Part shown: piece by piece, positions 27,761-42,044 of the stretch
How positions within the stretch are numbered: position 1 is the stretch's first letter
Layout: every line of letters begins with the position of its first letter
Virus record (IMG/VR): IMGVR_UViG_3300046507_000773
Span: 1-64,000 of that record
Length of the DNA: 64,000 bases
Direction: 5' to 3' (one strand)
Program-made: the position numbers and the translations under genes
Notes under the pieces: generated by a model
The model's input: the letters and a program-made list of their open reading frames with translations, nothing else
The model's database searches: none
Told to the model about the DNA's origin: nothing

Positions 27761-28231
27761 ATGGAAAATCTCCAACCCATTAAAGTCGTGCTCGCTACCG
27801 CAGGTGTGCCGACAGCCGCTGGCCACATCTACACCCAAAAGGCTCTGGAAAACGTTGTCAAGGGCCAGAAGAAGTTCTACCACGGCGAAGACAAGACTGG
27901 TGGCTACAACCTCCAGGACAAGGCCAAGACGCCGGTCCAGGCCATTTTGAGTATGGGTGAAAAGGAAGAGAAGCTCGCCCAACTTCTGTCCATCAACATC
28001 GGTAATGTCACGCATCGCGTGAGCAATCTCGAGATGGACGGGAATAAGCTCGTGGGCAAGATCGAGTACTGCGGAGCAAAAGGCGACGATGTGATCCGCG
28101 CCATGCTGGACAACGAACAACGTCCCGTCTTCGGTATCCGGGCACTGTGCGACAAACAGCCCAACGGCGTGCTGAATAACATCAGCGTCATCTCTTTTGA
28201 TCTCGTCAACTTCGAGGATAAACATGCCTAG
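27761..28231 (+). CDS. Prohead-protease-fold protein (T4 gp21/phiKZ gp175-like), probably inactive
   Basis: INIGNVTHRVSNL.MDG..LVGKI, FGIRA, ISFDLV. The expected catalytic His and Ser are absent. Confidence 0.6.
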   Translation: MENLQPIKVVLATAGVPTAAGHIYTQKALENVVKGQKKFYHGEDKTGGYNLQDKAKTPVQAILSMGEKEEKLAQLLSINIGNVTHRVSNLEMDGNKLVGKIEYCGAKGDDVIRAMLDNEQRPVFGIRALCDKQPNGVLNNISVISFDLVNFEDKHA

Positions 28232-28457
28232 GGCCAATCTTCCCCAGCCCGACTACCTGGATCTGTGTCGCCTCCTAGGGCCATATCAGCCCATTGAACC
28301 TCTGGACAAGATCATGGAAGGTCCGGTCATGAGAGTGGTGGGCGTCGATCCGGGTAGCGATAGCTTTTCCATCACCGCAGTTTCTTACAACAGCAAAACG
28401 GGGACCGTGACCGACGTCACGAGCTTTACCGAAATCAAAAATAACGAAGGACAGTAA
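28224..28457 (+). CDS. Small protein with an RNase H/RuvC-like first strand
   Basis: MRVVGVDPGSDSFSITAV in a 77-aa ORF. Confidence 0.55.
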   Translation: MPRANLPQPDYLDLCRLLGPYQPIEPLDKIMEGPVMRVVGVDPGSDSFSITAVSYNSKTGTVTDVTSFTEIKNNEGQ

Positions 28458-28834
28458 TGTACCGCGACCGCTATAGCTACCATGACGATCAACCCAAGGT
28501 CGTCATGATTGAAAACGACGAACTGGGCGAAGCACGTTTCACGAAACTCAAGGAAGAGTTCAAGAACGTAAAGCTCACGCCTGAAATGCAACGTCGTTAC
28601 GACAACATCGTCACGGTGTTCTCGTACCGCCTCGACCTGTCCAAGCAGGCGAAGTTCCCGCGTCAGTTCCAAGGTGCCGCTCAGCGCCTGGAAAAGTTCA
28701 AGTCCGTCGCTTTCTTCATGGATGCTTTCCAAGCACTCCTGGACGAATCGAAGAAGGCAGCAGCCGATGAACTGGAACGCAAGCGCACGCAGCGCAAAGC
28801 GCGTGAAAGCAAACCACGTTCCTGGGGCTGGTAA
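28457..28834 (+). CDS. Hypothetical protein
   Basis: 125 aa, TAATG-coupled. Confidence 0.75.
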   Translation: MYRDRYSYHDDQPKVVMIENDELGEARFTKLKEEFKNVKLTPEMQRRYDNIVTVFSYRLDLSKQAKFPRQFQGAAQRLEKFKSVAFFMDAFQALLDESKKAAADELERKRTQRKARESKPRSWGW

Positions 28835-29253
28835 TGATCGTCCAAGGAGAAGCCTGCCTATCCAAAGAGATTCCCTTGACATTACTCGCTCAAGCCGAGT
28901 TGATGAACAAGGAGTTCGTGGGTTCGACAGATTACAAGGTCGAACCTTACGAGCACAAGGATCGCCGTCCGCACAGTGTCGAATGGCGTTTCAAAATCGT
29001 GCACAAGCTCACCGGAGAATGCTTGACTCGCAACCTGGTGCCTGAAGGGGCCGACGCACACACGTACATGCTTTTCATCCATGCGGCAAAGGAACATGGT
29101 AATCGCATGCATGACGAAGGTGAAGCAGATTGCCTGAACCTTCTGTACCAGCACTTCGCCAAGGTTTTGGCTATCAAGCCACACTTGCAGCTTCGGACCA
29201 AAGAACGTGCCATCGCGGAATTTAAGGCTGACAATCCGCACCTTTTCAAATAG
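28834..29253 (+). CDS. Hypothetical protein
   Basis: 139 aa, TAATG-coupled. Confidence 0.75.
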   Translation: MIVQGEACLSKEIPLTLLAQAELMNKEFVGSTDYKVEPYEHKDRRPHSVEWRFKIVHKLTGECLTRNLVPEGADAHTYMLFIHAAKEHGNRMHDEGEADCLNLLYQHFAKVLAIKPHLQLRTKERAIAEFKADNPHLFK

Positions 29254-29262
29254 GAGACAGTC

Positions 29263-29652
29263 ATGTTCATCAGTACGCCTGCAATTCAAAAGCTGAGGGA
29301 CGAATGCGAAAATCCGGAAATTGCCAAGTTCATTGGCGTTCCGGTTTGGTTCTTCACGCTGATCGACGGTAAGGGTGGGGTGGCAAGTGTCAATGCTGTC
29401 ATTACTCGCATCCAGCCTGGTGACGATCCCAACGGTGCTTTCACGGTGGACCTGGGGATCGATACCTCGGTCGAAGGTATCTACCTGGTGCTGACCGATC
29501 TCGTCGTCAAGAGCTTGGTCCTCGAGAATCGCAAGGATGGTGGCCCGATGGAGCGCTCTGCCCTTGCACTCGAAGCAGACCTCGAAGAAGTAAGTGACAT
29601 CATCAATGCCCCGCGCTATGGTGAACTGTCACTCGTACAGAAACCCGAATAA
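29263..29652 (+). CDS. Hypothetical protein
   Basis: 129 aa, AGGAG RBS. Confidence 0.75.
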   Translation: MFISTPAIQKLRDECENPEIAKFIGVPVWFFTLIDGKGGVASVNAVITRIQPGDDPNGAFTVDLGIDTSVEGIYLVLTDLVVKSLVLENRKDGGPMERSALALEADLEEVSDIINAPRYGELSLVQKPE

Positions 29653-29664
29653 CGAAGGAAAGCA

Positions 29665-30546
29665 ATGATTAAGAGCGATAAGTGGATCAAGTCCAAGTGC
29701 ATGTTGCCCTTGGCGGTTGCGCATTACATGGTGCGTGGTTCGGCCTTCGATGGTCCGTTCCGAAAGCACGAATTTATCTACGGCGATGCGACCACCGACA
29801 TCGACGCGGAGTTCGACAAAATCGTCAACCGTGTTTCGCAGGAGAACAACGTCATCAGCGGTTCGACGCAACTGGAATACGTTGGCGACATCCAGGTCAA
29901 CGACTTCCAGCCGATGATCGAACCTTTCGTGCCGACGCAAATCCGGACTGCTGGCCATGACCGACATGTCCGCATGCTGGCGATGCCGCGCAATACGCCG
30001 CAAGAAATGCTGGCCCGCACGCTCCTGGATTTCGATGGCGACGACGAATTCGAAAAGCGTAAGATCATCTCGCGTGGTCTGACGAGCTTCGGTTACGATG
30101 TGACGCTGGCTGAAGAAGCTGCAATCTTCACCAACGTCAACTGCGCCGTCATCGATCCGCTGAACTTTACGGAAGACACGCTGCAGCGCGTCATTGCGAA
30201 AGACGGCTACTTCCTCATGCCGCCCAACAGCTACCTGCTGGGTTACACGAAGGAGTACTTCCGCATGCCGCGTAATGTCATTGCCGTCGCGCTGGGCAAG
30301 TCGACTTACGCTCGTGCCGGCGCCATCGTGAACGTCACACCGATCGAACCGGGCTTTGAAGGTACCGTCGTCATCGAGATCGCCAACGCGACCAGCCTGC
30401 CGATGAAGGTCTACGCCAACCAGGGTATCGCACAGTTCCTCTTCTTCGAATCCGACGAAGACTGTGAAACCTCCTACGCTGACCGTAATGGTGGCGAAGG
30501 TGGCAAGTACCAGGGCCAACGCGGCCTGGTGACTCCGCGGGGCTAA
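29665..30546 (+). CDS. dcd: dCTP deaminase with two N-terminal insertions
   Basis: [61 protein letters not shown]. Confidence 0.92.
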
Positions 30547-30547
30547 T

Positions 30548-30958
30548 GTGAAAGCGCTCAAGATTGCTCTTGAAGGCGTCGCTCTTAATGAACTGCGTGT
30601 CTCTCTTGAAGAGCTGGCCGAAGTTCACGAGGGTGGCGTCGTGGCGTTCGATCTGGACGGTACCCTGGCAGAGTACGATGGCTGGAAAGGCGAGATGCAT
30701 ATCGGAGCTCCAGTTCCGAAGATGGTCGCGCGCTGGAAAGAATATCGTGCCAAGGAAGTCGTCTGCGTGATCTTCACGGCACGTTGGTCGGACGATCCTG
30801 CGAAAGAAATGGCGATGAAGCAAATCCAGGCCTGGGCTCTCCAGAACCTGGACGAGATTCCGCCGATCACCAACGAGAAGACCCCGAACATCGTTCGCAT
30901 CTACGATGACCGGGCACGACAGGTTCTCGAAAACGAAGGCGTCGTAGTCGGCGAGTAA
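30548..30958 (+). CDS. HAD-superfamily phosphatase (PNK-phosphatase-like)
   Basis: AFDLDGTLA, IFTAR, TNEK, YDDRA. Confidence 0.85.
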   Translation: MKALKIALEGVALNELRVSLEELAEVHEGGVVAFDLDGTLAEYDGWKGEMHIGAPVPKMVARWKEYRAKEVVCVIFTARWSDDPAKEMAMKQIQAWALQNLDEIPPITNEKTPNIVRIYDDRARQVLENEGVVVGE

Positions 30959-31018
30959 GTAACCACGGGGAGTGCTGTTGGGCAGCGCTTCCCGTTTTAT
31001 GATGAAAGGAAAAGTAAC

Positions 31019-31285
31019 ATGAACATGCGTCCTGATCAAATCCAGGATTTCTTCAAGAATTTCCTGCGTCATTTGCAGTACGAAGGAGAATTGCCAACTG
31101 AGCTGCGTGAACAACTTCACGGCGCTACGCAGGTCGGACTGCTTACGTCTCCTACGCTCTTTGTCATCCGGTTTCTCGATAGTAATCATCATCCGGTGGC
31201 TTATCAGTACAAAATCCGCGATCCTAACACGCCCGCACCGGAAGTGGAACGTGCTCAGGGTAACTGGGAACTGGTGCCGGAATGA
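31019..31285 (+). CDS. Hypothetical protein
   Basis: 88 aa, GAAAGGA RBS. Confidence 0.7.
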   Translation: MNMRPDQIQDFFKNFLRHLQYEGELPTELREQLHGATQVGLLTSPTLFVIRFLDSNHHPVAYQYKIRDPNTPAPEVERAQGNWELVPE

Positions 31286-31467
31286 GTAACGGTTCTTTTA
31301 ATCGAGCAGAGCCTACTGCCACAGGTGGCGAGCTCAAGAAGTACCAGGGTGATTTATCTCCCAATACTGATCCCAACTACGACGCTGAAATGGAAACGAC
31401 CATGCAGCAAGCCGAGGCTCGTGGTGAATACAATCCGTGGAACAAAGGAGAAGAAAAAGATGACTGA
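31282..31467 (+). CDS. Small acidic hypothetical protein
   Basis: 61 aa, ATGA-coupled. Confidence 0.65.
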   Translation: MSNGSFNRAEPTATGGELKKYQGDLSPNTDPNYDAEMETTMQQAEARGEYNPWNKGEEKDD

Positions 31468-31897
31468 AGAAAAGAAACGTGAACGCCTGTATCTGCGTTC
31501 CAAGTCGATCAAGATTACTGCCGGGTCGGATTTCACGAAAACCGTTCTCGACGCAGCTTGCTACCTGACCAAGCAGCTGAACGATCTGTCCTCCATCACG
31601 GAGCAGCCCAGTATCGAAACCATGCGCGCAGCCATCATGCCGGCGTACACGATGATCGCTTCGCAGCTGGGCGACTTCCTGAACATCCCGGACATGACTG
31701 AAGCTCGCTTGACGGGCCTGTCGGTGGACATGAACCCGTGCTTGGGTACGTACAGCTTCGACGTGAACTACAAACTCGATAGCGGCAAGTACCAGCCCTA
31801 CAGCGTCAAGGTATCGTCGCCCGATGGCAACGTCTTCTTGCGTGTCCGTGAAGCAAAAGGCGTCGAGGCAGCTTTCGAATTCATGCAGCAGATCTAA
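31460..31897 (+). CDS. Hypothetical protein
   Basis: AAGGAG RBS before MTEEKKR. Confidence 0.75.
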   Translation: MTEEKKRERLYLRSKSIKITAGSDFTKTVLDAACYLTKQLNDLSSITEQPSIETMRAAIMPAYTMIASQLGDFLNIPDMTEARLTGLSVDMNPCLGTYSFDVNYKLDSGKYQPYSVKVSSPDGNVFLRVREAKGVEAAFEFMQQI

Positions 31898-31983
31898 TTT
31901 TTATCATGTTGCCGTATTAAATAGATAACGCCTTTGTCGCGTAGTGCACTCCAGTGGGGAGTGCCTTTTTTAGGAGAAGTGCC

Positions 31984-32730
31984 ATGAGTACCAACGTAAT
32001 TGCAACGATCCCTTTCCTCCAAGGTCAAATGGAGATCATTGATTTTCCGACGGACGTGAAGAAATTTGCGGAGTTTCCCGATGGTCGCTTCCTCGTGCTC
32101 GATGGCACCGGTCGCAACATGGGGCCTCAGCACTTTATCCGTATCGACACGTTAGCACACCACTCGACGGTATCGTCGCTTGCGGGTAAGAAAATCCTTG
32201 ATGCCAATATTCAGCTGCTGGCCTGGGTAAAAGACAAATACGGCTTCGAAGCTTCTATTGGAGGTAAGAGTTTGGAGCGTGCTTTAGTTCGCACGATCCA
32301 CCCAGCAAAAGCAAAGGGTCGTCCAAGCGTGCCCAATGCCATTTATGGCGTAAGTCGTCCGAATGCAGGTTCTATCATCGAAATGCGCATGCCGCGTGGT
32401 ATTTCGATGTTGGCATATGGCACCGGGGAACAAATCCCGGAGATCGAAGACACGAAAAAGAACTTTGTCGGTAATTTGAAGTTTGTAGGACGTAAGCAGC
32501 GTTTTCGTATCGGCCACAACAACCAATTTGATTGGTGTGATCAGATTCTTGCTCAACCTGGCGACAAGCTGGATGAACGAGTTGAAGAGGCTTCTCGCTA
32601 TCTCCCTACGCTCATTTCGCCGGCAGATACAATCAGTGAAATGCGCTACTATTTCGAACAAGCGTTCCCCTGGGCCGCAACCTTGTTGGGAGACATCACC
32701 ATCGATTCTCCCTTGACGCTTGTGAAGTAA
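31984..32730 (+). CDS. Hypothetical protein
   Basis: AGGAG RBS before MSTNV. Confidence 0.75.
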   Translation: MSTNVIATIPFLQGQMEIIDFPTDVKKFAEFPDGRFLVLDGTGRNMGPQHFIRIDTLAHHSTVSSLAGKKILDANIQLLAWVKDKYGFEASIGGKSLERALVRTIHPAKAKGRPSVPNAIYGVSRPNAGSIIEMRMPRGISMLAYGTGEQIPEIEDTKKNFVGNLKFVGRKQRFRIGHNNQFDWCDQILAQPGDKLDERVEEASRYLPTLISPADTISEMRYYFEQAFPWAATLLGDITIDSPLTLVK

Positions 32731-32748
32731 CCTTTACCGAAGGATATC

Positions 32749-33327
32749 ATGACTCCGCTTATTCCCATTTACAGTGACGAGAGCAAGAAGTTTTTCGTCG
32801 ATCCGGCTCTCCATAAGCCCTACGAGCGCCAGGTGTCGGGCGACATCAGCGTGACCACGAACTTCCTCAAGTTCGGCGAACGTTTCGACCTGATGGATAT
32901 CTCGAGCGCAACCGAGATGTTCGTGACCGGCATCCGTGACGTGACCGATACGATCGATCCGGCGGTGACACTGGAAAAGATCCTGGTGTCGTTCGGTGAC
33001 CTGGGTACTGCAATTTTCGATGTACGCAACCAAGTGTTCGCATCCATGCACTTTCCGCAGGGGGCCAGTTTCGATACCGTCAATCTCGATTTCAGTACCA
33101 CGAAGAAGTTCGAGAACATCGACATTATCCCGAACCCGCCGGTGGGTGACACGTTCCGCATCAAAGTCACGGGCCATGTGAACCTGCGGACTGGCGACAC
33201 GTTCCTGACGGCCATTCTGGAAGCGATGCCGGCCGGTGTGAATATTCCGCGACCCAGTCTCGAAGGGTACACCCTGCAAGCAAATGCGACCAACATCGCG
33301 CGTTTGGCGACGCCGCTGACTGCCTAG
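32749..33327 (+). CDS. Free-standing paralog of the central domain of the major capsid protein
   Basis: Aligns by eye end-to-end to MCP residues ~222-441 encoded at 46960-47619. Confidence 0.85.
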   Translation: MTPLIPIYSDESKKFFVDPALHKPYERQVSGDISVTTNFLKFGERFDLMDISSATEMFVTGIRDVTDTIDPAVTLEKILVSFGDLGTAIFDVRNQVFASMHFPQGASFDTVNLDFSTTKKFENIDIIPNPPVGDTFRIKVTGHVNLRTGDTFLTAILEAMPAGVNIPRPSLEGYTLQANATNIARLATPLTA

Positions 33328-33331
33328 TCGC

Positions 33332-33354
33332 AAGGGGGCTTCGGCCCCCGTTTA
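33332..33354 (+). terminator. Terminator-like hairpin
   Basis: GGGGGC-TTCG-GCCCCC followed by GTTTATGCCG. Confidence 0.75.
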
Positions 33355-33425: not shown

Positions 33426-33875
33426 ATGAGTACTTACGACAATGGCTTGACTGTCATCGTCAAGGGCGGCACCGCTTCCGGCAAAACGACTGTGGCAGCT
33501 TTCATCGGGCAGAAACTGCAAGAAGCTGGCTTTTCTCACATCGAGTACGACTGGCAAGAACAGCTCGTTCCTGGTGCGATCGAAGACAAGCTGGAGTCGC
33601 TTGCCGCTCGTCGTTCTGACGACAAGTTCTTCCAGAAGCCGATTCGTATCATCGAAGAACAAGAGCATCGCCGGCCCGTTCACAATGAAGAAAAGTTCAG
33701 TGAATACACTTACGAGCCACTCGTGACGCCCTCGGATTATGCAGCCGAAGCCGTACTCGACAGTCTGCGCGCTCGTAAAGGCGTGGGCAGTGAACTCGAC
33801 GGATACGACCAGGAAACCCTGGGTAGCATCTGTAAGGACATCAAGGAGATTATCTCCGAGTCCATGGGCAAGTAA
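33426..33875 (+). CDS. Small P-loop (Walker A) protein related to the 57-59 kb family
   Basis: VIVKGGTASGKTTVAAFIGQKLQEAGFS. Confidence 0.75.
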   Translation: MSTYDNGLTVIVKGGTASGKTTVAAFIGQKLQEAGFSHIEYDWQEQLVPGAIEDKLESLAARRSDDKFFQKPIRIIEEQEHRRPVHNEEKFSEYTYEPLVTPSDYAAEAVLDSLRARKGVGSELDGYDQETLGSICKDIKEIISESMGK

Positions 33876-34035: not shown

Positions 34036-34422
34036 ATGAAGCTTCAGGGTGAAAGTGAATTAAAGAACGTTGAAGTTGTAAAACTCAATGAAGGAGAACA
34101 TTTTGCCGGGGTCGTACTCGGCAATGGAGAAGGACCCGATTACTACCTCGTGTTGCTACCGCATGAACTTCACGATGCCACGTGGGCAGATGCCTTAGAG
34201 TGGGCCGCAAGCTTCGAAGGAACGTTGCCCAATAGGCGCGAGCTTTCGCTTCTGAAAGCCAACTTGGCCGAAAAGTTCGAGCCCGTTCAGTACTGGTCTT
34301 CGGAGAAGAATGAGCACCGTAAGCGAGAAGTGTGGATACAGCACTTCCGCAACGGTAATCAAACTTCCTATGGCCAGTGCTTCCGTGGATCGGCGCGCGC
34401 TGTTCGCCGGGTGCTGATGTAA
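34036..34422 (+). CDS. DUF1566/Lcl-like domain protein
   Basis: W.DA..WA...G.LP.RREL.LL, YWSSE, W.Q.F..G.Q, ARAVRR. Confidence 0.85.
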   Translation: MKLQGESELKNVEVVKLNEGEHFAGVVLGNGEGPDYYLVLLPHELHDATWADALEWAASFEGTLPNRRELSLLKANLAEKFEPVQYWSSEKNEHRKREVWIQHFRNGNQTSYGQCFRGSARAVRRVLM

Positions 34423-34432
34423 TATCGGTACC

Positions 34433-34467
34433 AAAAAAGAGAGTTTGGGGATACTCTCTTTTTTTTT
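34433..34467 (+). terminator. Intrinsic (possibly bidirectional) terminator
   Basis: AAAAAAGAGAGT/ACTCTCTTTTTT stem. Confidence 0.8.
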
Positions 34468-34487
34468 GTTTGAAAGAATTTATAACG

Positions 34488-34497
34488 CCATATTACG
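34488..34497 (+). promoter_or_regulatory. Early-promoter-like motif CCATATTACG
   Basis: Contains TATTAC, preceded by AAGAATTT. Confidence 0.7.
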
Positions 34498-34555
34498 CGC
34501 TTGAGATGTAACCAATGTTTCTTCTATAAACCGCTTTTGATAGGAAATCAAAATC

Positions 34556-35872: not shown

Positions 35873-36644
35873 AGAACATGCCATTGGCTACTTAGCGTCC
35901 CTGCTTAGCCAATCTGGCAAGAACGATCTGGAGGCCAAGAATACGGCGGGAGACCTCGTCTTTAAACTGGCCCCGGTACTGATCGTTAAAGATGTGACTG
36001 CCAGTTACGTTAAAGGACTGTGCCACCGCGTTAGTACGGCCAACGCGGAACTGAGCACGGTGCTGAGTTATCACAACTACCTGCAAGCTGCCGCTATCAT
36101 CCTCGGCTACGACGGCTGGCATCCACTCATGAAGGCTGTCGATAAGAGCGATCTTATCCCGGTGGACGTTGAACGCGATGTTGTTCCTTTGACGCACCGG
36201 AACAAGGCCAGTCAAGTGCGCGGTGGCTTGCATGCCCTGGCCAAGGGTACTCACATCACCTGGAAAGACATGCGCGACACCTTGCGTAAGTTGGCAAGTC
36301 ACGACATGCATTCCATGATTGATGCCGTCATGATGGAAATGCAGATGAAAGTCGGCATTACCTCGGCAAGTGATGAGCGGGGCGACATGCTTTTCGCGAT
36401 CTTCCCTGATCCGAGTTCGGACATGGGTGACGACTGGTTCATGATCCTTGGCGAGAAGTACCGCCCGCCGCAGGAACGTGATGGCGAATACAAGACGGCA
36501 ATGATCGCTGTCCAAACGTATCCGCTTTCCAACCGCATCGCTCACATCGAAGGCGGCAAGATCGACGAGTACTCGTCGGTATCGATCAAGGAAATGGTCG
36601 AGGCTACCCGTAAAGCCCGTCAAGCACAAAAACAAACTGCATAA
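35856..36644 (+). CDS. Hypothetical protein
   Basis: Contains LSYHNYLQAAAIILGYDGWHPL, a helical motif seen in phage/plasmid proteins. Confidence 0.75.
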   Translation: MKTKTKEHAIGYLASLLSQSGKNDLEAKNTAGDLVFKLAPVLIVKDVTASYVKGLCHRVSTANAELSTVLSYHNYLQAAAIILGYDGWHPLMKAVDKSDLIPVDVERDVVPLTHRNKASQVRGGLHALAKGTHITWKDMRDTLRKLASHDMHSMIDAVMMEMQMKVGITSASDERGDMLFAIFPDPSSDMGDDWFMILGEKYRPPQERDGEYKTAMIAVQTYPLSNRIAHIEGGKIDEYSSVSIKEMVEATRKARQAQKQTA

Positions 36645-36667
36645 CTTCACTAGGAAAGTGAGAAGCT

Positions 36668-37072
36668 GTGAAACAAGAAGACATCGATAAGCTCAAACTG
36701 AACGCCTCCCTGGTCTTGGAACAACTGGGGGAAATTTTCGAAGAGCGCAATGAACTGCCCAATAAAGCAGTCACGTTGGAAAGTGCAGAAATCGGTACTC
36801 ACGTCATTATGCGCATGACGATGCACGATGTTCGTGATGGCAAGATGGTGCCTACGCCTGAGCATCCGGGTAAGCCCATGTGCCTGCTCGGCAAGCCGCC
36901 CTATGTCCATCCCACTAAAACGTTCTCTGGGGCGCTTTGTTTCGTCGGGGACCGTGTGGACCAGTACCACCTGCTAGAGCTCCCTGAGGGCTCGTATCGT
37001 GCCATGGCGGAGATATTCTACGACTTCCTCGTGCACGGTGAAAAGCCTGGTACTGATTTGCCGAAAGCATAA
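36668..37072 (+). CDS. Hypothetical protein
   Basis: 134 aa. Confidence 0.7.
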   Translation: MKQEDIDKLKLNASLVLEQLGEIFEERNELPNKAVTLESAEIGTHVIMRMTMHDVRDGKMVPTPEHPGKPMCLLGKPPYVHPTKTFSGALCFVGDRVDQYHLLELPEGSYRAMAEIFYDFLVHGEKPGTDLPKA

Positions 37073-37141
37073 GCTGTTTTTACCGCATCATCTTATCAAC
37101 TGAGTAGGCGAAGCCTCTCAACAATTAATTGGAAGAACACC

Positions 37142-37852
37142 ATGACCGCAGTCAAGAAGACCGCTCATCTGACCGATGCACAGCTCAAGCGCGAGCGTCA
37201 ATCGGAGTACAATGCAATTCTTTCAGGTCGCTTTATTAAGACCGTGTATTACGAAACCCCAGATAAGAAGAAGAGCACCAAGAAAAACCGTTCTCTCTAC
37301 ATGCGTACTGCCGTGTCGAACGTCATGAAAAACATGGCGCAAAACCGTCACGACTCGCTGTGGGCTGAAGTGTGGAACGATTTGACTGGCGAACTCATCG
37401 CTACCGTCGGTCGAGACATCATGGGTAAGGTCGAAGCAACTCAGTACTTCGATCCGGTCACCGGCAAGAAGCTGCGTGCTCAAGCCCGTAAGGTTTCGGT
37501 TGTCGCTGTCGGCATCACTGCAGAGCAGACCGAGAAAGTCAACCAGCTGATCTTGATGCTGCATTTGTTCGAGAGCAGCCCGGCAGCACAGGTGTTCGTG
37601 CAGGATGGTGTGTTCTACGCCGACGAACTGGGCACCATGGCGCTGAACGAAGTCTATCGCAACGTCATCGAAGACTTGCTCGAACAGATCGACACCACGA
37701 TCTTCATGGGCGAAACCAGCTTCTTCGATAAGAAGGTATTGAAGTACTTCGAAGAAGCAAGTTCGTACAAAATTGTCCAAACTACTGAAGGTTACGATGT
37801 CACTCTGTCGGAAACCTTTGCTATCCGTCGCCGCATTTTTCAACGCTCCTAG
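37142..37852 (+). CDS. Hypothetical protein
   Basis: 236 aa. Confidence 0.8.
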   Translation: MTAVKKTAHLTDAQLKRERQSEYNAILSGRFIKTVYYETPDKKKSTKKNRSLYMRTAVSNVMKNMAQNRHDSLWAEVWNDLTGELIATVGRDIMGKVEATQYFDPVTGKKLRAQARKVSVVAVGITAEQTEKVNQLILMLHLFESSPAAQVFVQDGVFYADELGTMALNEVYRNVIEDLLEQIDTTIFMGETSFFDKKVLKYFEEASSYKIVQTTEGYDVTLSETFAIRRRIFQRS

Positions 37853-37866
37853 GAAAGAGGGCTAAC

Positions 37867-38370
37867 ATGAAGGTTTATACCCCGGCGGGTTATTTCGAAA
37901 ACCGTCCATTGTTTTCCAATCTGCTCGACGTCGTGATGGGCGTGAATCGGCAGATGTATCGGTTTCACAACAATGGCATTACCGTGCCCTATAAGCTTCG
38001 CATCACTGAAGAAGAAACGATGATCGACGGCGAGCACTGCGTTGGCTACCGCTTCACCTTCAAGGAAACGGGATTCACGGTGCTCCTGATGGTGGAGAGC
38101 TACATCGTGACGGATAATGTACCGCATCCGCAGTTCTCGCTTCGCATGAGTGCTGTCGAGGCTTTGCCGGTCATTGCTCGCAAGGTTCCCGGCTTGGGCA
38201 TGGTTGGTGTTTCTGTATTTGACACTACGCGTCCGCCCGACCACATGTTCACGATGGAAGAACGTGAATACATCCACAACGTCATTCTCGACTACCTGTA
38301 CGAGGGCAAAACGCCTGCAGACATTCGTCGCGAGAATTCTCCCCTGAAACTCGTTACCAACAACTCCTAG
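37867..38370 (+). CDS. Hypothetical protein
   Basis: 167 aa. Confidence 0.75.
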   Translation: MKVYTPAGYFENRPLFSNLLDVVMGVNRQMYRFHNNGITVPYKLRITEEETMIDGEHCVGYRFTFKETGFTVLLMVESYIVTDNVPHPQFSLRMSAVEALPVIARKVPGLGMVGVSVFDTTRPPDHMFTMEEREYIHNVILDYLYEGKTPADIRRENSPLKLVTNNS

Positions 38371-38381
38371 GAAAGAGAGTT

Positions 38382-38669
38382 ATGCGCCTTACTACTCCTG
38401 TGCTTTACAATGGCCGCACCGTCGAATTGGCCATGGGTTTTGACAACCACAACCAGGGTTACTTCATGACCGTCGCCCCCACTGACGAAGATGAAGACAA
38501 CCCGGACGCTGACGAAGAAACCGGCATGATCTACAGCAACCTCGACGACAAGGCGCTGAAGTTCCCGGCAGTCACCGAAGACCTGTCGCACTACAAGAAG
38601 GTTCTGCGTGACATGAACATCGACGTGCCGTCCGAGTTCTTTGGCAAAGTTCTGGCAGCATGTGACTGA
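38382..38669 (+). CDS. Small acidic hypothetical protein
   Basis: MGFD...QGYFMTV...MIYSNLDD. Confidence 0.75.
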   Translation: MRLTTPVLYNGRTVELAMGFDNHNQGYFMTVAPTDEDEDNPDADEETGMIYSNLDDKALKFPAVTEDLSHYKKVLRDMNIDVPSEFFGKVLAACD

Positions 38670-38735
38670 GTTCCGTTTGAAAGGGAGTTGGCTTGCGAGG
38701 CCGCTCCCTTTCTTTTTTATTTGGGAGAAAAAGAA

Positions 38736-39308
38736 ATGCTGATTCAAATGCAGCGCAAACTGGTCAACGGTTTGCATCATATCGGGCTGGGTTCGTTGGG
38801 TCAGCTCGTCATGCCGAAGGAAGACAAAGAAAAGCTGGCCGAATTGGTAAAGGGTGTCAAGACGGCCCACGACTTTGTGAAGGGCATGGAAAAGACCGCA
38901 CTCGAGAAGTATCCAGATACCGCTATCTGGTTCGTGGAAGCGAAGGTAAAGACCCTGCCTGGCGCCATGCTTATCTTTAACGACGCGATCTACAACTTGT
39001 TCACGGTATTGAAAACGGAAGAACGTTTCTTCGACTTCTTCCGCAAATTCGTACTGAACGATGAATCGTACAAGGCCATCGTGCTCTTTTTCGCTACGAT
39101 TCAGACGCTCCTGGAAAATTACGGTGCGCTCGATGATGATGGTGGCCCTAAGCTTACCAAGGAAGAAGACGAGGCCCTCGATCTCATGGTGGTGCGTACG
39201 CTAGTGGGTAAGCTCGGTACTTCGCTGTCGAGCAGGTACACCGGCGAACAACTGACTTACGCCCTGATCGAGGCCCTTGACGACGACGTGAAAGGTCAGC
39301 CGGCATGA
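38736..39308 (+). CDS. Hypothetical protein
   Basis: GGAG RBS before MLIQMQ. Confidence 0.75.
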   Translation: MLIQMQRKLVNGLHHIGLGSLGQLVMPKEDKEKLAELVKGVKTAHDFVKGMEKTALEKYPDTAIWFVEAKVKTLPGAMLIFNDAIYNLFTVLKTEERFFDFFRKFVLNDESYKAIVLFFATIQTLLENYGALDDDGGPKLTKEEDEALDLMVVRTLVGKLGTSLSSRYTGEQLTYALIEALDDDVKGQPA

Positions 39309-39649
39309 ACCTGCGTCACATGAAGGAGCACATCGCAGCAGTGGTGGCGCAAATTGCTAAGGATCGTGGTGTTGAAACGAACATCATCGTGTCCCACAAT
39401 GTCGTTCATCGCGACATGGCTTTGCTGCGCTACCAAACCCCGGACAATAAGAAAGATGTCCGGTTTGTGAAGGTGGAAGCCAATCCCCAGGGTAAGCGCT
39501 GGACCCTGACGTTTTGCTTTAACTTGCAAGGCGCTAGCGATGGCTCAAACCGCATTGAAGTGGCGGGTGATGAGATTGTACCCATTACCGCTGTTGTTAT
39601 CCGCAAATACCTCGACGACGGCGTGGTACCTGAAGAACAAACCCTTTAA
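39305..39649 (+). CDS. Hypothetical protein
   Basis: 114 aa, ATGA-coupled. Confidence 0.75.
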   Translation: MNLRHMKEHIAAVVAQIAKDRGVETNIIVSHNVVHRDMALLRYQTPDNKKDVRFVKVEANPQGKRWTLTFCFNLQGASDGSNRIEVAGDEIVPITAVVIRKYLDDGVVPEEQTL

Positions 39650-39663
39650 GAAGGAGGAACCAA

Positions 39664-40155
39664 ATGGCAGAGAAAACTCAATTGCAATACAGTGGCGATA
39701 TCCGTCTCATGCACGAGCGCGTGGGCTTCGGAATGAATCACGAGATCCTGCGTGAAATCATTCGTTCGCTTTGCCGCGGCATTGATGTGTTCGCCGCCAC
39801 TATGGGTAAGGTCGAATCCATGGTGCGTGAAATGCCCGACTACGAATCGAAGGTCGGTATTTCCGGTTACGTCTTCCGTATCCTGCCCTCGTGCAATCCG
39901 AATGATACGTTCGGCTATCGACTGTACGTTCGTTCCAATCGTGAACGCATCCCGACCATGCGCTTCATCCCGATAAGCTTTTCTCCACTCGATGGAAAAA
40001 TCAATACCGTCGGACCGGCTGAAGAACTGACGATGGGCGAGATGGACCTGCATGCTGCTGTCAATGACTTCAATCGTCGTCGTTCTGCCGCGTTAATGGA
40101 TCGTGTCGTCGCAGCGGCCGAGAAACAAAGCGAGCGATCGCCCAACACGAAATAA
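39664..40155 (+). CDS. Hypothetical protein
   Basis: 163 aa, AGGAGG RBS. Confidence 0.8.
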   Translation: MAEKTQLQYSGDIRLMHERVGFGMNHEILREIIRSLCRGIDVFAATMGKVESMVREMPDYESKVGISGYVFRILPSCNPNDTFGYRLYVRSNRERIPTMRFIPISFSPLDGKINTVGPAEELTMGEMDLHAAVNDFNRRRSAALMDRVVAAAEKQSERSPNTK

Positions 40156-40165
40156 AGGAACTGTA

Positions 40166-40693
40166 GTGTCCACAAGAAAGAAAGCGGGTACGCTCGGCAA
40201 GAAGCCGGAAACTACGCCAGCAGTAGAAGGTCAGCGTCAATTACCACCAGGTTTGACGACGATGTTCACGGACCATTCGTTTGAACGAGCAGACGCTCTG
40301 AAAGAGATCCCCAAGAAAAGCCTTGAAAAGCTGGGGAAGCACAAAGGTTCTTTGCGTGATTGGGCCAACATTCAGTTTCGTTTGGCATTCGGACTGTTTC
40401 TTGTCAAAGCAGTTCTCGAAATGGAAGACGAAGCAGCGTCTGTTGTGCTCCCGCTTAACGAAGCAGTACTCGTTAATCGTGCCGTCATGCATCGTGCAAA
40501 GATGCGTATCGCCAATAAGCACGAGTGGGCAGCAACGCCGATGGAAGTTGAGATGATCGATGAAGGACTCGATTACATCAACCAAATCCAGGATCAGGTT
40601 ACGCCTGAAGAAATCAAGACGGCATTTGAAAATGCCAAGCAGGGCTTCGAGACGTCCATGTTGACCATGGCGATTCGAATGAACAAACGGTAA
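40166..40693 (+). CDS. Hypothetical protein
   Basis: GTG start after AAAGGAA. Confidence 0.7.
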   Translation: MSTRKKAGTLGKKPETTPAVEGQRQLPPGLTTMFTDHSFERADALKEIPKKSLEKLGKHKGSLRDWANIQFRLAFGLFLVKAVLEMEDEAASVVLPLNEAVLVNRAVMHRAKMRIANKHEWAATPMEVEMIDEGLDYINQIQDQVTPEEIKTAFENAKQGFETSMLTMAIRMNKR

Positions 40694-40749
40694 TTCAATT
40701 AAGGCCTCATTCCCACAGTGGGGCAACTATCTAGGAAGGATAAAAAGAA

Positions 40750-41703
40750 ATGACTCTCGTAGTTTTCAAGAACGGAATTCTCGCCACCGATTCGCGCCGC
40801 ACGCACGTGTGTTCCAGAACCCACTCGAACAAGTGTCCTTACTGCGAAAAGCCCGCTGTCTCGGTAAAGGACGATGCGGACAAACTTTTCGTCGTTCGAA
40901 AGAAAGGTTCCATCAAGTTTCGTAACGTCACCATTCTCGCGTACGCGTGTGCTGGCGATGTCGAGATGATTAACCGCATTAAAGGGGTCCTTCGTCTGCA
41001 CGATGATCTCGAAGCGGTGTACAAGAGCTACCTCGCTATTCATGGTACGCATACCAAGAACGAGCGCACCTGCACTGTCATGCTCATCGGCGTGGAACAC
41101 AACTTCATCGTTCGCATCCCCGAACAAGGCAGTCTGGATGTGAAGGTTTTCGAGAAGGACAAGTTCCTCGCCATCGGTTCCGGCACGCAGGGGGCACGCT
41201 GGATCAATAAGCTCATGCCTGAAGCATGGGCACCGCTCATTATCAACATGGTGATGGAGGACGACATTGGCGTTGGCGGTACGATCTCGTACGTGGATCT
41301 GAATGAAGAGATAGAGGAAGGCAGTCTGCGTCCTCCAGTCATGCTTCATGTCCCGAACGATCCGAAAGCCATGATTGAACGCGCCAACAAGGTCTTCAGC
41401 ATGGGTGAAGCTGTCGAAGCGGAAAATGAAGTGGTCAAGGTTCGCAAGGAAGCAGGTTATCCTGAAGTCTGGGATTTGCCGATCTCCGACCTGGGGCTGA
41501 AAGTGCATACGCTCAACAACTTGATGACTGAAGGCGGCATTACCCATGTCGCTGAACTCATCATGTTCACGCCGCAAACGCTCCTGAAGATCCCCAAGAT
41601 CGGCAAGGTGGCACTGCAAGAAGTCCACGCCCGCCTGAAAGATCGTAAGCTCACCCTGGGCACCGATACCAACAGCTGGCCGAATCACAAGAAGGCAAAG
41701 TAA
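40750..41703 (+). CDS. HslV/Ntn-hydrolase-like peptidase fused to an RNAP alpha-subunit C-terminal domain
   Basis: Thr at position 2 (MTLVVF..GILATDSR), FLAIGSG. The C-terminal 80 aa align to the alpha-CTD through LTLG....SWP. Confidence 0.85.
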   Translation: MTLVVFKNGILATDSRRTHVCSRTHSNKCPYCEKPAVSVKDDADKLFVVRKKGSIKFRNVTILAYACAGDVEMINRIKGVLRLHDDLEAVYKSYLAIHGTHTKNERTCTVMLIGVEHNFIVRIPEQGSLDVKVFEKDKFLAIGSGTQGARWINKLMPEAWAPLIINMVMEDDIGVGGTISYVDLNEEIEEGSLRPPVMLHVPNDPKAMIERANKVFSMGEAVEAENEVVKVRKEAGYPEVWDLPISDLGLKVHTLNNLMTEGGITHVAELIMFTPQTLLKIPKIGKVALQEVHARLKDRKLTLGTDTNSWPNHKKAK

Positions 41704-41705
41704 CA

Positions 41706-42044
41706 GTGGATCGACTTATCGACGTCGACGTGGTTAGTCGCATGTATCCGGGTCAGATGGTGCAGCTTTACCTGATGGCTTCGTGGCTCTATTACTGGCA
41801 GGATGATTCTGTCATGACGGATCATGCGTTTGACTACATGTGCAAATGCTTGTTGGCTGAGTTCGATAACTTCGAGCACATTCACAAGCATTTAATCGAC
41901 AAGGAAAGCTTAGAAGCTGGAACGTGTCTTTTAGCCAAAGATGCGTTTCCTCAGCGCGTCAGGCATGCTGCTGATGGTTTGTTGCGCTCCATTGCAACAG
42001 ATGGCTTCTGGGACGATGTCGAGCCCCGGTTAAAACCAGCATAA
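41706..42044 (+). CDS. Stand-alone NAD-dependent DNA ligase subdomain Ia-like protein
   Basis: YLMASWLYYWQDDSVMTDHAFDYMCKCL resembles LigA Ia (YY..D.P.isD.eYD.L). Confidence 0.65.
   Translation: MDRLIDVDVVSRMYPGQMVQLYLMASWLYYWQDDSVMTDHAFDYMCKCLLAEFDNFEHIHKHLIDKESLEAGTCLLAKDAFPQRVRHAADGLLRSIATDGFWDDVEPRLKPA

What the first reader, a model, noticed from the sequence alone, without database searches (positions are those of the whole stretch)
27761..42044. Cluster of broken-off pieces of core machines: a possible decoy arsenal
Seen within the accessory region: an MCP domain (32749), a dead head protease (27761), an alpha-CTD (41461), a ligase Ia domain (41706), a helicase motif (27131) and, further left, a beta' zinc finger (9233), alongside a Tad1-like sponge. 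Known: several defence systems sense capsid, protease or replication proteins. Inference: the phage may express fragments early to saturate pattern-recognition sensors. Neutral duplication debris is the alternative explanation.
Basis: inference. Interest (0 to 1): 0.6.

Follow-up and report, generated by a model that had tools for sequence, protein, structure and literature searches.

The report
Selected single-domain genes, not debris
In a soil jumbo phage, four small genes built from single domains of the capsid protein, head protease, RNA polymerase alpha subunit and DNA ligase are real and under selection. Each belongs to its own wider gene family, and the capsid-domain family appears undescribed and is sometimes fused to a known anti-immunity sponge domain.

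Summary
The window is the first 64 kb of a 227-kb chimallin-encoding (phiKZ-like) jumbo phage from rhizosphere metagenomes. Four of the seven reported pieces are real.

- 32749-33327 is exactly the insertion (I) domain of the phiKZ-type capsid protein.
- 27761-28231 is a truncated prohead-protease paralog that lacks the catalytic His and Ser.
- 41461 onward is an alpha-CTD, but it forms the C-terminus of a proteasome-beta/HslV-like peptidase that looks active.
- 41706-42044 is a solo ligase Ia (Nlig-Ia) domain.

The helicase motif, the beta' zinc finger and the Tad1-like protein were not confirmed.

Neutral debris is rejected. A syntenic relative keeps every gene at full length, with dN/dS of 0.09-0.24.

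A coordinated decoy arsenal is not supported either. The genes lie in three transcription units and belong to four independent families. Two of those families are already described (cryptic protease paralogs, solo Nlig-Ia).

The new element is the free I-domain family. It has at least 48 diverged solo clusters, includes 201phi2-1 gp106, and forms one clade apart from capsid-embedded I domains. Some members are fused to a Tad2-like anti-Thoeris domain or to a mini P-loop. This gives only indirect support for a counter-defence, capsid-mimic role, and only for this gene.

The parts
26778..26809 (+). Predicted early (virion RNAP) promoter motif that starts the operon 26848-30958
   Evidence: 32-nt motif with 16 sites genome-wide, all on the + strand, against 0-2 in shuffles. 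The same motif precedes chimallin, PhuZ and an RNAP beta piece. A site is conserved at the orthologous place in L003 (4708).
27131..27748 (+).
   Evidence: No family hit in Pfam, PHROGs or NCBIfam. Conserved in L003 at 60% identity, dN/dS 0.18.
27761..28231 (+). Truncated, catalytically dead paralog of the S80 prohead protease
   Evidence: phrog_7478 E 1.5e-4. Its L004 counterpart hits Pfam S80 at E 8.6e-12. His76 becomes Leu, Ser153 becomes Gly and Asp178 is kept in three lineages. dN/dS 0.17.
29665..30546 (+). dCTP deaminase, a context gene in the same operon as the dead protease
   Evidence: Pfam DCD E 6e-28. Lies next to the S80 paralog in L004 as well.
30965..30995 (+). Intrinsic-terminator-like hairpin ending the first operon
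   Evidence: 14-bp stem followed by a T run.
32749..33327 (+). Free insertion (I) domain of the phiKZ-type major capsid protein
   Evidence: Pfam PF25620 E 2.4e-22. Model pLDDT 92.8, matching only the phiKZ and phiKp24 capsid proteins. 89% identical in L003, dN/dS 0.086, with 61 synonymous-only against 22 nonsynonymous codons. Family of at least 48 solo clusters.
33426..33875 (+). 149-aa mini P-loop protein (KGGTASGKT), possible partner of the I-domain protein
   Evidence: Resembles the P-loop fused N-terminally to I domains in P0011, P0014, P0016 and P0119. Its first 85 aa have 26 synonymous and 0 nonsynonymous codon changes against L003. The complex prediction gave no verdict.
34433..34464 (+). 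Terminator-like hairpin ending the unit that holds the I-domain gene
   Evidence: 12-bp stem followed by a T run.
34474..34505 (+). Predicted early promoter motif that starts the operon 34556 to about 42044
   Evidence: Score 35.3. Conserved in L003 at 11405.
40750..41703 (+). Proteasome-beta/HslV-like Ntn peptidase with a zinc-knuckle insert, fused to an RNAP alpha-CTD
   Evidence: phrog_1040 E 3e-10 over aa 1-191. The homolog P0006 lacks the CTD. T2, D14, K45 and G143-S144-G145 are invariant, as are H19, C21, C29 and C32. Fold hits are Anbu and proteasome subunits, from a low-confidence model. Alpha-CTD Pfam E 5e-7. dN/dS 0.24.
41706..42044 (+). Stand-alone NAD+-binding domain Ia of NAD-dependent DNA ligase (Nlig-Ia)
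   Evidence: Pfam PF22745 E 2.9e-9. phrog_19233 E 1e-24. No ligase catalytic module in the genome. dN/dS 0.10.
46297..48474 (+). The phage's real major capsid protein, whose I domain spans residues 221-447
   Evidence: Pfam PF25620 E 8e-195. The I-domain profile matches residues 221-447.

Best explanation
The region is part of the early/accessory arm of a nucleus-forming (chimallin-encoding) jumbo phage. The 'pieces' are not broken genes. Each is one complete, self-folding domain taken from a core machine and kept as an independent gene or fused to a new partner. Each evolves under purifying selection within its own separate gene family.

SHOWN
(1) 32749-33327 is a free capsid I domain. It belongs to a large clade of free I-domain proteins that is distinct from capsid-embedded I domains.
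(2) 27761-28231 is a truncated S80 prohead-protease paralog that lacks the catalytic His and Ser.
(3) 40750-41703 is a proteasome-beta/HslV-like peptidase with an intact N-terminal Thr, carrying an alpha-CTD in which the DNA-contact Arg, Lys and Ser are replaced.
(4) 41706-42044 is a solo Nlig-Ia domain.

INFERRED
- The dead protease and the peptidase/Nlig-Ia genes are early genes transcribed from virion-RNAP promoters.
- The alpha-CTD acts as a protein-targeting module for the peptidase rather than as a DNA binder or a decoy.
- Nlig-Ia binds NAD+, as a sensor or a buffer.
- The free I domain is a soluble, non-virion copy of the capsid's most exposed surface domain. It acts in counter-defence, most likely by occupying host sensors that recognise the capsid lattice without giving them the multivalent array they need to fire. 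It works with nucleotide-binding partners: a Tad2-like sponge when fused, and the mini P-loop that is fused in some phages and adjacent here.

The four genes do not form one coordinated system.

The confidence given is for the whole statement. The shown parts alone I hold at about 0.9, and the capsid-mimic mechanism alone at about 0.25-0.3.
For: Selection and conservation:
- Full synteny with L003, and dN/dS of 0.086 (I domain), 0.17 (dead protease), 0.24 (peptidase-CTD) and 0.10 (Nlig-Ia).

Free I domain:
- Sequence, model and fold match. phiKZ gp120 I domain is residues 248-472 (PMC11297242).
- Among the best 150 representatives there are 48 solo proteins, about 14 N-terminal fusions and 3 C-terminal fusions.
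- 61 of 65 free domains fall in one clade with support 1.0.
- Tad2-like fusions in P0158 (E 3e-12) and P0067 (E 1e-8).
- P-loop fusions, plus a P-loop neighbour here.
- A cpYpsA/SLOG gene two genes downstream of P0010.
- The fusion gene lies two genes upstream of chimallin.
- 201phi2-1 gp106 is a member (hhalign 98.9%). It sits between chimallin and an RNAP beta' gene and carries no virion mass-spectrometry note, unlike gp98.
- Thoeris TIR proteins are activated by capsid protein (PMC12578639).

Dead protease. Triad and 'cryptic protease' paralogs in PMC5694885.

Peptidase-CTD. In RAY, gp116, assigned to the HslVU protease family (its figure legend calls it an HslU-superfamily homolog), localises to the phage nucleus.

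Nlig-Ia.

Promoter motif shared with chimallin, PhuZ and an RNAP beta gene.
Against: - No expression, binding or phenotype data exist. No RNA runs hold this phage.
- The I-domain unit has no early motif, so its timing is unknown.
- The counter-defence role rests on two fusion clusters and gene neighbourhoods.
- Tad2-like domains are widespread, and not all are shown to be sponges.
- A monomeric capsid piece could equally activate a sensor.
- The window phage's own I-domain protein has no Tad2-like domain, and none is found in the genome.
- The P-loop link is a 33-column profile match centred on the Walker A motif, and the complex prediction gave no verdict.
- The peptidase model has low confidence (pLDDT 57).
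- dS is near saturation (0.9-1.9), so the dN/dS ratios are approximate.
Confidence: 0.55

Rival explanations
1. Full decoy arsenal. All the fragments are expressed early as inert look-alikes that soak up host pattern-recognition sensors for capsid, protease, polymerase and ligase.
For: Two of the three units carry the predicted early promoter motif. All genes are under selection. The I-domain family has Tad2-like fusions. Capsid sensing by Thoeris is documented.
Against: - The alpha-CTD is covalently attached to a peptidase with an intact catalytic Thr, and the peptidase exists without the CTD in a relative.
- Solo Nlig-Ia keeps NAD+-binding character and is a described small-molecule binder.
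- The genes lie in three units and do not co-occur as a set in L004, 201phi2-1, L009 or L010.
- Three of the seven listed pieces are not real.
- I know of no sensor for RNAP alpha-CTD or ligase Ia; I did not search for one.
Confidence: 0.07
2. The free I domain is a capsid-associated protein. It could be a decoration or cement protein, or an assembly chaperone, that docks on capsid I domains through the same I-I contacts that join capsomers.
For: In phiKZ, I domains of neighbouring capsomers dimerise (PMC11297242). The protein shares the I-domain fold. T4 gp24 is a precedent for capsid-protein paralogs serving structural roles (PMC5694885). A second partial capsid paralog lies next to the capsid gene.
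Against: - The gene lies far from the structural module, among accessory genes.
- In 201phi2-1 it lies beside chimallin and RNAP genes, and gp106 has no virion mass-spectrometry note.
- Fusions to Tad2-like and P-loop domains are odd for a cement protein.
- It is only 36% identical to the phage's own I domain.
- phiKZ itself gave no second match besides its capsid gene.
Confidence: 0.2
3. The free I domain is not a capsid mimic. It is a generic beta-rich scaffold or oligomerisation module that presents or regulates nucleotide-binding partners (sponges or small kinases).
For: It has varied N- and C-terminal partners: Tad2-like, mini P-loop and at least three unknown domains. A P-loop gene is adjacent here, and both genes are the best conserved in their unit. 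A SLOG gene lies two genes downstream in L009.
Against: Most members (48 of about 65) are solo proteins with no partner domain. The complex prediction gave no verdict. It offers no reason why the capsid I domain in particular was recruited.
Confidence: 0.2
4. Neutral duplication debris: decaying leftovers of duplicated core genes.
For: Each is shorter than its parent. The protease copy has lost two catalytic residues.
Against: - Open frames of identical or near-identical length in L003, with dN/dS of 0.09-0.24.
- 61 synonymous-only against 22 nonsynonymous codon changes in the I domain.
- Domain boundaries match structural domain boundaries exactly.
- The families are deep.
Confidence: 0.02

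Closest known systems
Insertion (I) domain of the phiKZ major capsid protein gp120 (PDB 8Y6V; also phiKp24, 8BFL)
   Same: Same fold and detectable sequence homology over the whole 192 aa. The boundaries coincide with the I domain, residues 248-472 in gp120.
   Different: It stands alone, with no N-arm, linkers, P domain or A domain. It is shorter than the phage's own I domain (192 against 227 aa). It belongs to a separate clade of free I domains. It is encoded in the accessory region, not the head module.
Truncated 'cryptic' prohead-protease paralogs of giant phages (SPN3US gp117, 201phi2-1 gp206, PhiPA3 gp143; PMC5694885)
   Same: A short (136-156 aa), diverged paralog of the S80 protease that coexists with the full-length enzyme and is presumed inactive.
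   Different: Here both His and Ser are lost (L and G), whereas gp117 keeps Ser and Asp. Direct homology to gp117 was not shown. The link to S80 runs through the L004 counterpart.
Solo Nlig-Ia proteins of phages (for example ECBP2_0056; Iyer et al. 2022, PMC9503650)
   Same: A stand-alone domain Ia in a phage record where no ligase catalytic module was found.
   Different: None that I could establish. Here it directly follows the peptidase-alpha-CTD gene, and that pairing is kept in L003 but not in L004.
HslV / Anbu / proteasome-beta Ntn peptidases; HslVU-family protein gp116 of Erwinia phage RAY
   Same: N-terminal Thr after Met, a GSG motif, a conserved Asp and Lys, and a proteasome-like fold. 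A chimallivirus accessory gene, like RAY gp116.
   Different: It carries an invariant H-C-C-C insert and, in this lineage only, a C-terminal RNAP alpha-CTD. There is no Pfam Proteasome hit. Homology to RAY gp116 was not tested.
Tad2 (Thoeris anti-defence 2, DUF2829) sponges
   Same: Two diverged clusters of I-domain proteins carry an N-terminal Tad2-like domain above the Pfam cut-off.
   Different: The window's own protein has no Tad2-like domain, and the genome has none. The link is by fusion in relatives only.

Membership tests
PhiKZ-type major capsid protein (PF25620, HK97 fold) | Insertion (I) domain | tested here: met
   Pfam E 2.4e-22 at positions 145-267. Foldseek matches to 8bfl and 8y6v with TM 0.73-0.76.
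PhiKZ-type major capsid protein (PF25620, HK97 fold) | N-arm, P domain and A domain that form the shell | tested here: not met
   The 192-aa protein ends where the I domain ends. The MCP profile covers only positions 225-388. It is therefore not a capsid protein.
Peptidase S80 (phiKZ gp175-type prohead protease) | Sequence homology to the protease domain | tested here: met
   Weak for the window protein (PHROG E 1.5e-4). Clear for the L004 counterpart (Pfam E 8.6e-12). Shared FxIRA and FDxxN motifs.
Peptidase S80 (phiKZ gp175-type prohead protease) | Catalytic triad His-Ser-Asp (gp245 H77, S153, D178) | tested here: not met
   His is replaced by Leu and Ser by Gly, with Asp kept, in the window, L003 and L004. 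Triad taken from PMC5694885.
Peptidase S80 (phiKZ gp175-type prohead protease) | C-terminal propeptide or targeting region | tested here: not met
   The alignment ends about 70 residues before the end of the full-length enzyme.
Cryptic prohead-protease paralogs (SPN3US gp117 kind) | A short, diverged second copy beside a full-length protease in the same genome | tested here: met
   A 156-aa copy at 27761, and the full-length enzyme at genome 123458-124240.
Cryptic prohead-protease paralogs (SPN3US gp117 kind) | Direct homology to gp117, gp206 or gp143 | not tested
   tblastn of the window and L004 proteins hit full-length proteases and unnamed second places, not these named genes.
Solo Nlig-Ia (Iyer et al. 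2022) | Domain Ia match as a stand-alone protein | tested here: met
   PF22745 at 37.9 bits against a cut-off of 27, in a 112-aa protein.
Solo Nlig-Ia (Iyer et al. 2022) | No ligase catalytic module in the phage | tested here: met
   No PF01653 or PF01068 match in the 227-kb record, which is 86% complete.
Solo Nlig-Ia (Iyer et al. 2022) | NAD+-contact residues conserved; NAD+ binding | not testable with these tools
   No PDB sequence match was available to align against. Reading the sequence by eye, the Tyr..Asp..aromatic-Asp pattern is present, but this rests on my own knowledge of LigA.
RNA polymerase alpha subunit | C-terminal domain (alpha-CTD) | tested here: met
   PF03118 E 5e-7. Aligns to alpha-CTD structures.
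RNA polymerase alpha subunit | N-terminal dimerisation and assembly domain | tested here: not met
   Residues 1-190 are proteasome-beta/HslV-like. There is no RNA_pol_L or RNA_pol_A_bac hit.
RNA polymerase alpha subunit | UP-element DNA contacts (E. coli R265, K298, S299) | tested here: not met
   In the alignment, TVRSANCL aligns with KVHTLNNL, and GKKSL aligns with GKVAL. The residue roles come from my own knowledge.
HslV / proteasome-beta Ntn hydrolases | N-terminal Thr nucleophile with conserved Asp, Lys and a Ser-Gly motif | tested here: met
   T2, D14, K45 and G143-S144-G145 are invariant in four homologs.
HslV / proteasome-beta Ntn hydrolases | Alpha-beta-beta-alpha sandwich fold | tested here: inconclusive
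   352 proteasome-family hits at E of 1e-3 or better, but from a model with pLDDT 57. No Pfam Proteasome hit.
Helicase (claim at 27131) | Walker A/B or any helicase family match | tested here: not met
   No hits in three libraries. No GxxxxGK[ST] in the sequence.
RNAP beta' zinc-binding domain (claim at 9233) | Significant similarity beyond the Cys spacing | tested here: not met
   Beta' chains match at E 0.9-1.6, no better than PKC C1 domains. No Rpb1_1 match in the genome.
Tad1 / Tad2 sponges (claim 'alongside a Tad1-like sponge') | A family match in the window | tested here: not met
   No Tad-type family appeared in Pfam scans of the window's called ORFs of 40 aa or more. PF11195 is absent from the genome. 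I could not verify whether the library holds a Tad1 model.

The most novel reading that the evidence does not exclude
Free capsid I-domain proteins (this gene, 201phi2-1 gp106 and at least 48 diverged clusters) are a new class of phage counter-defence protein. They are monovalent mimics of the capsid's exposed surface domain. They blind capsid-sensing immune systems such as Thoeris TIR sensors, and in some phages are fused to a Tad2-like signal sponge so that one protein blocks both sensing and signalling.
Probability: 0.22. Interest if true: 0.85.

Novelty: new variant of a known kind. Interest (0 to 1): 0.55.

Why it matters
Jumbo phages carry hundreds of unexplained early genes. This analysis shows that several of them are whole domains lifted from core machines and kept under selection. 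That turns 'hypothetical proteins' into testable objects.

The free I-domain family is the most useful lead:
- It is sizeable.
- It occurs in a cultured, genetically tractable phage (201phi2-1 gp106, beside chimallin).
- Its fusion to a Tad2-like domain links it to Thoeris, a system now known to be triggered by capsid protein.

If it does blind capsid sensors, it would be, as far as I know, the first example of a phage using a piece of its own capsid as an immune decoy.

The proteasome-like peptidase with an alpha-CTD suggests a new way of aiming a phage protease at partners of the host RNA polymerase.

Tried and rejected
- Megablast of the region against 50,697 phage records found nothing.
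- The search for related loci with the I-domain protein in IMG/VR found nothing.
- P0003 has no contig on record.
- P0008 and P0009 lie on contigs of 1-2 kb. These confirm complete genes but give no context.
- Complex prediction of the I-domain protein with the adjacent mini P-loop protein scored 0.29 against a mark of 0.32, so it gave no verdict. I do not use it for or against binding.
- The look-up of sequencing runs returned only DNA runs from rhizosphere metagenomes and no RNA, so expression could not be tested.
- A PDB sequence search with Nlig-Ia gave no usable match.
- tblastn of the window's dead protease found one weak hit only.
- tblastn of the 247-aa capsid-core paralog found nothing.
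- P0080 and P0141, long proteins with 5-7 'stretches', turned out to be Ig, cadherin or PKD repeat proteins and were dropped as spurious.
- The collinear alignment of the 317-aa protein with full-length alpha subunits briefly suggested a whole alpha homolog. I rejected this because residues 1-190 are proteasome-like and a homolog lacks the CTD.
- My crude codon-usage gene caller preferred antisense shadows at four places. The + strand calls were kept because of homology, low dN/dS and the gene calls in L003.
- A literature search for capsid-fragment decoys returned nothing, and 'gp106' hits concerned PhiPA3, not 201phi2-1.

Full report
WHAT THE WINDOW IS

The window is bases 1-64000 of a 226,810-base IMG/VR virus record, estimated 86% complete. 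The record encodes:
- a phiKZ-type major capsid protein (46297-48474, Pfam PF25620, E 8e-195);
- an S80 prohead protease (genome 123458-124240);
- chimallin (genome 161339-163384);
- a PhuZ-like tubulin and split RNAP subunits.

It is therefore a nucleus-forming, phiKZ-like jumbo phage. Near-identical DNA occurs only in rhizosphere metagenomes. The closest cultured capsid protein is Burkholderia phage FLC9, at 50% identity. Genes from 22.6 to 43.8 kb are tightly tiled on the + strand. A relative on a 99.5-kb Logan contig (L003) is syntenic gene for gene.

CHECKING THE OBSERVATION

Four of the seven items are real.

1. Capsid domain, 32749-33327 (192 aa).
   - It matches PhiKZ_MCP profile positions 145-267 (E 2.4e-22) and phrog_3231 'major head protein'.
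   - It is 36% identical over 84 aa to the phage's own capsid protein.
   - tblastn aligns 98% of its length to a stretch of about 225 aa inside capsid genes of isolate phages.
   - An AlphaFold2 model built on a 42-row alignment is confident (pLDDT 92.8, pTM 0.88). In the PDB it matches only the phiKp24 and phiKZ capsid proteins (E 2e-12 to 1e-10, TM 0.73-0.76).
   - In phiKZ gp120 the matched part is the insertion (I) domain, residues 248-472. This is an elaboration of the HK97 E-loop that sits on the outer surface and pairs with I domains of neighbouring capsomers (PMC11297242).
   - In this phage's own capsid protein the I-domain profile covers residues 221-447.
   - The gene is therefore one complete structural domain, not an arbitrary fragment.

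2. Dead head protease, 27761-28231 (156 aa).
   - It has only a weak PHROG protease hit (E 1.5e-4).
   - Its 152-aa counterpart in a more distant 269-kb relative (L004) sits beside the same dCTP deaminase gene and hits Pfam Peptidase_S80 at E 8.6e-12.
   - I aligned it with the phage's own protease. Against the SPN3US gp245 triad H77/S153/D178 (PMC5694885), the His is Leu, the Ser is Gly and the Asp is kept in all three short copies.
   - About 22 N-terminal and 70 C-terminal residues are missing.

3. Alpha-CTD at 41461.
   - It is real (Pfam E 5e-7; PDB alpha subunits), but it forms residues 240-297 of the 317-aa product of 40750-41703.
   - Residues 1-191 match phrog_1040 'HslV family peptidase' (E 3e-10).
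   - A 244-aa homolog in L004, 43% identical and named an HslV subunit by JGI, lacks the CTD.
   - The protein starts Met-Thr. It keeps invariant D14, K45 and G143-S144-G145, and carries an invariant H19/C21/C29/C32 insert.
   - A low-confidence model (pLDDT 57) retrieves only Anbu and proteasome subunits.
   - In the CTD, the residues aligned with the alpha subunit's VRS and GKKS motifs are VHT and GKVA. The classical UP-element contacts (R265, K298, S299, from my own knowledge) are therefore replaced.

4. Ligase Ia domain, 41706-42044 (112 aa).
   - It matches Pfam Nlig-Ia (E 2.9e-9) and phrog_19233 (E 1e-24).

Three items are not confirmed.
   - The 205-aa product of 27131-27748 matches nothing and has no Walker A motif.
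   - The 'beta' zinc finger' at 9233 is a CxCG-x12-CxxC ribbon at the C-terminus of a protein with a hydrophobic N-terminal stretch that looks like a membrane anchor (read by eye). It shares the Cys spacing of the beta' zinc-binding domain, but beta' chains match only at E of about 1, no better than PKC C1 domains.
   - No Tad1- or Tad2-type family appeared in Pfam scans of the window's called ORFs of 40 aa or more, and PF11195 is absent from the genome.

DEBRIS OR SELECTED GENES?

Against L003, every gene keeps its frame and essentially its length.

| Gene | Protein identity | dN/dS (Nei-Gojobori) |
|---|---|---|
| I domain | 89% | 0.086 |
| Dead protease | 71% | 0.17 |
| Peptidase-CTD | 64% | 0.24 |
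| Nlig-Ia | 72% | 0.10 |

The I domain is among the best conserved genes of the region.

Codon counts tell the same story. The I-domain gene has 61 synonymous-only and 22 nonsynonymous codon differences. dS is 0.9-1.9, near saturation, so the ratios are approximate, but the direction is unambiguous. Neutral debris is rejected.

EACH PIECE BELONGS TO ITS OWN FAMILY

An exhaustive phmmer search with the 192-aa protein found 174 cluster representatives. I sorted the best 150 by domain position:
- 72 are full-length capsid proteins;
- 48 are solo proteins of 165-235 aa that align end to end;
- about 14 carry the I domain C-terminally behind another domain;
- 3 carry it N-terminally.

Short contigs show solo genes flanked by other genes, so they are complete. 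Several lie on contigs of 110-245 kb.

In a FastTree of 142 I domains, 61 of the 65 free domains fall in one clade with support 1.0, apart from the capsid-embedded domains. There are 7 Fitch changes overall. The sample is biased because it was picked by similarity to this protein. It still points to an old, diversifying gene family rather than repeated decay of each phage's own capsid gene.

Cultured members exist:
- 201phi2-1 gp106 (188 aa, hhalign probability 98.9%);
- Phabio_274 (315 aa);
- a likely member in Xanthomonas phage RTH11, WJJ55076, found by tblastn only.

I found no description of this family in the held literature. That is not proof of novelty.

The dead protease matches a described kind. 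Ali et al. 2017 reported truncated, presumably inactive paralogs of the prohead protease in SPN3US (gp117), Erwinia phages, 201phi2-1 (gp206) and PhiPA3 (gp143).

Solo Nlig-Ia proteins were described in 81 phages that mostly lack any ligase catalytic module. They were proposed to be NAD+ sensors (PMC9503650). This genome likewise has no ligase catalytic domain.

An HslVU-family accessory protein that localises to the phage nucleus is known in Erwinia phage RAY (gp116). I found the alpha-CTD fusion only in this lineage (P0004, P0005).

IS IT A CLUSTER?

Strong + strand terminators at 26318, 26690, 30965 and 34433, together with a 32-nt motif, divide the region into units. The motif reads roughly AAGAWTTTTCAAC-N-ACATATCACG-N4-TG. 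It has 16 sites in the genome, all on the + strand, against 0-2 in shuffles.

The motif precedes chimallin, the PhuZ-like tubulin and an RNAP beta piece. It fits the rule that each RNAP-encoding jumbo phage has its own AT-rich early-promoter consensus (PMC7598289). I therefore read it as the early, virion-RNAP promoter. This is an inference.

Motif sites start two units:
- 26848-30958, which holds the dead protease and the dCTP deaminase;
- 34556 to about 42044, which ends with the peptidase-CTD and Nlig-Ia genes.

Both sites are conserved in L003. The unit with the I-domain gene (31019/31954-34422) has no such site.

Outside close relatives the genes separate:
- L004 keeps the dead protease, the deaminase and the peptidase, but there the peptidase lacks the CTD and is followed by a CCA-adding-type enzyme.
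- In the 20 kb of L004 that I hold, no I-domain gene was found.
- In 201phi2-1 the I-domain gene lies between chimallin and an RNAP beta' gene.

The co-location therefore reflects the phage's early/accessory arm, not a conserved functional unit.

WHAT THE I-DOMAIN PROTEIN MIGHT DO

Its contexts point away from the virion.
- The gene lies far from the head module.
- 201phi2-1 gp106 carries no 'identified using mass spectrometry' note, whereas the nearby gp98 does.
- In L011 the gene lies two genes upstream of chimallin.

Its partners point to nucleotide biology and counter-defence.
- Two diverged clusters (P0158 and P0067) have an N-terminal Tad2-like domain above the Pfam cut-off (47.2 and 35.7 bits against 25).
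- P0158 and a solo form (P0017) sit in one 90% cluster, so fusion and fission are recent.
- Four clusters (P0011, P0014, P0016, P0119) have an N-terminal mini P-loop.
- In the window the gene directly downstream (33426-33875) is a mini P-loop protein. It is the best match in the genome to that fused domain. Its first 85 residues show 26 synonymous and no nonsynonymous codon changes against L003.
- In L009 a cpYpsA/SLOG gene lies two genes downstream.

Staphylococcal and streptococcal Thoeris TIR proteins are activated by forming a complex with the major capsid protein (PMC12578639), and Tad2 sponges sequester the Thoeris signal. The most economical reading is that the free I domain is a soluble copy of the capsid's exposed domain that interferes with capsid sensing, and that some phages have fused it to a signal sponge.

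A plausible reason why a mimic would inhibit rather than trigger is that TIR enzymes need to assemble on a multivalent surface, which a monomer cannot provide. This is inference. I put it at roughly one in four to one in three. The structural and scaffold readings remain open.

THE OTHER THREE GENES

- The peptidase looks catalytically competent. Its alpha-CTD has lost the DNA-contact residues, so I read the CTD as a protein-targeting module. It could bring factors that normally dock on the host alpha-CTD to the peptidase, or bring the peptidase to them.
- Nlig-Ia is most simply an NAD+ binder, as already proposed in the literature.
- The dead protease may still bind S80 substrates or cleavage motifs. 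Nothing here says what for.

COMPARISON AND VERDICT

The 'arsenal' framing is not supported.

Two items are new members of described kinds (the cryptic protease and the solo Nlig-Ia). One is a new fusion variant (the proteasome-like peptidase with an alpha-CTD). The free I-domain family appears undescribed and is the part worth following.

No alternative genetic code was used. No reads were laid.

Noticed in passing
window 48703-49446 (+): A 247-aa ORF directly after the capsid gene is a weak collinear paralog of capsid residues 490-708, the P/A core of the HK97 fold (BLASTP E 2e-8, capsid-HMM E 1.4e-9). Together with the free I domain (capsid residues 221-447), the two partial paralogs cover most of the mature capsid protein. 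There is no tblastn match in isolate phages.
   Followed up: partly
window 2069, 8321, 18169, 24043, 26778, 34474, 49492; genome 68924-174463: A 32-nt promoter-like motif (about AAGAWTTTTCAAC-N-ACATATCACG-N4-TG) has 16 sites, all on the + strand. It precedes chimallin, PhuZ and an RNAP beta gene, and three sites are conserved in L003. It is probably the early promoter consensus of this phage.
   Followed up: partly
window 33426-33875; also 59059-59367, 57565-58155: A family of mini P-loop proteins (deviant Walker A, KGGTASGKT), with two or three weak paralogs in the window. The ESM Atlas places the nearest clusters among viral hypothetical proteins of about 90 aa. The first 85 residues of the copy next to the I-domain gene are 100% identical to L003 despite 26 synonymous codon changes.
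   Followed up: partly
window 8390-9379 (+): A 329-aa protein with a hydrophobic N-terminal stretch and a C-terminal CxCG-x12-CxxC zinc ribbon, preceded by the early-type motif at 8321. It has no family match.
   Followed up: partly
window 17234-17665 (+): A 143-aa protein weakly similar (phmmer E 1e-3) to the unknown C-terminal domain that follows the I domain in P0143 and P0085. This is a second possible 'split versus fused' pair with the I-domain family.
   Followed up: no
window 40750-41703, residues 19-32: An invariant His-x-Cys...Cys-x2-Cys insert inside the proteasome-like peptidase domain, probably a zinc knuckle. It is present in all four homologs, including the one without the alpha-CTD.
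   Followed up: no
window 244-1056 (+): A 271-aa protein matching Pfam GP38 (phage tail-fibre adhesin) at E 4.7e-12, at the very start of the record.
   Followed up: no
window 34036-34422 (+): A 128-aa protein with a sub-threshold Lcl C-terminal domain match (E 1.2e-6, 29.3 bits against a cut-off of 34.9). It is the last gene of the unit holding the I-domain and P-loop genes, and no ortholog turned up in L003.
   Followed up: no
window 31954-32730 (+) and L004 14143-15006: The 258-aa gene directly upstream of the I-domain gene has a distant homolog (29% over 85 aa) in the 269-kb relative L004. In L003 that position is occupied by different small genes, so the flanks of the I-domain gene are variable.
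   Followed up: no
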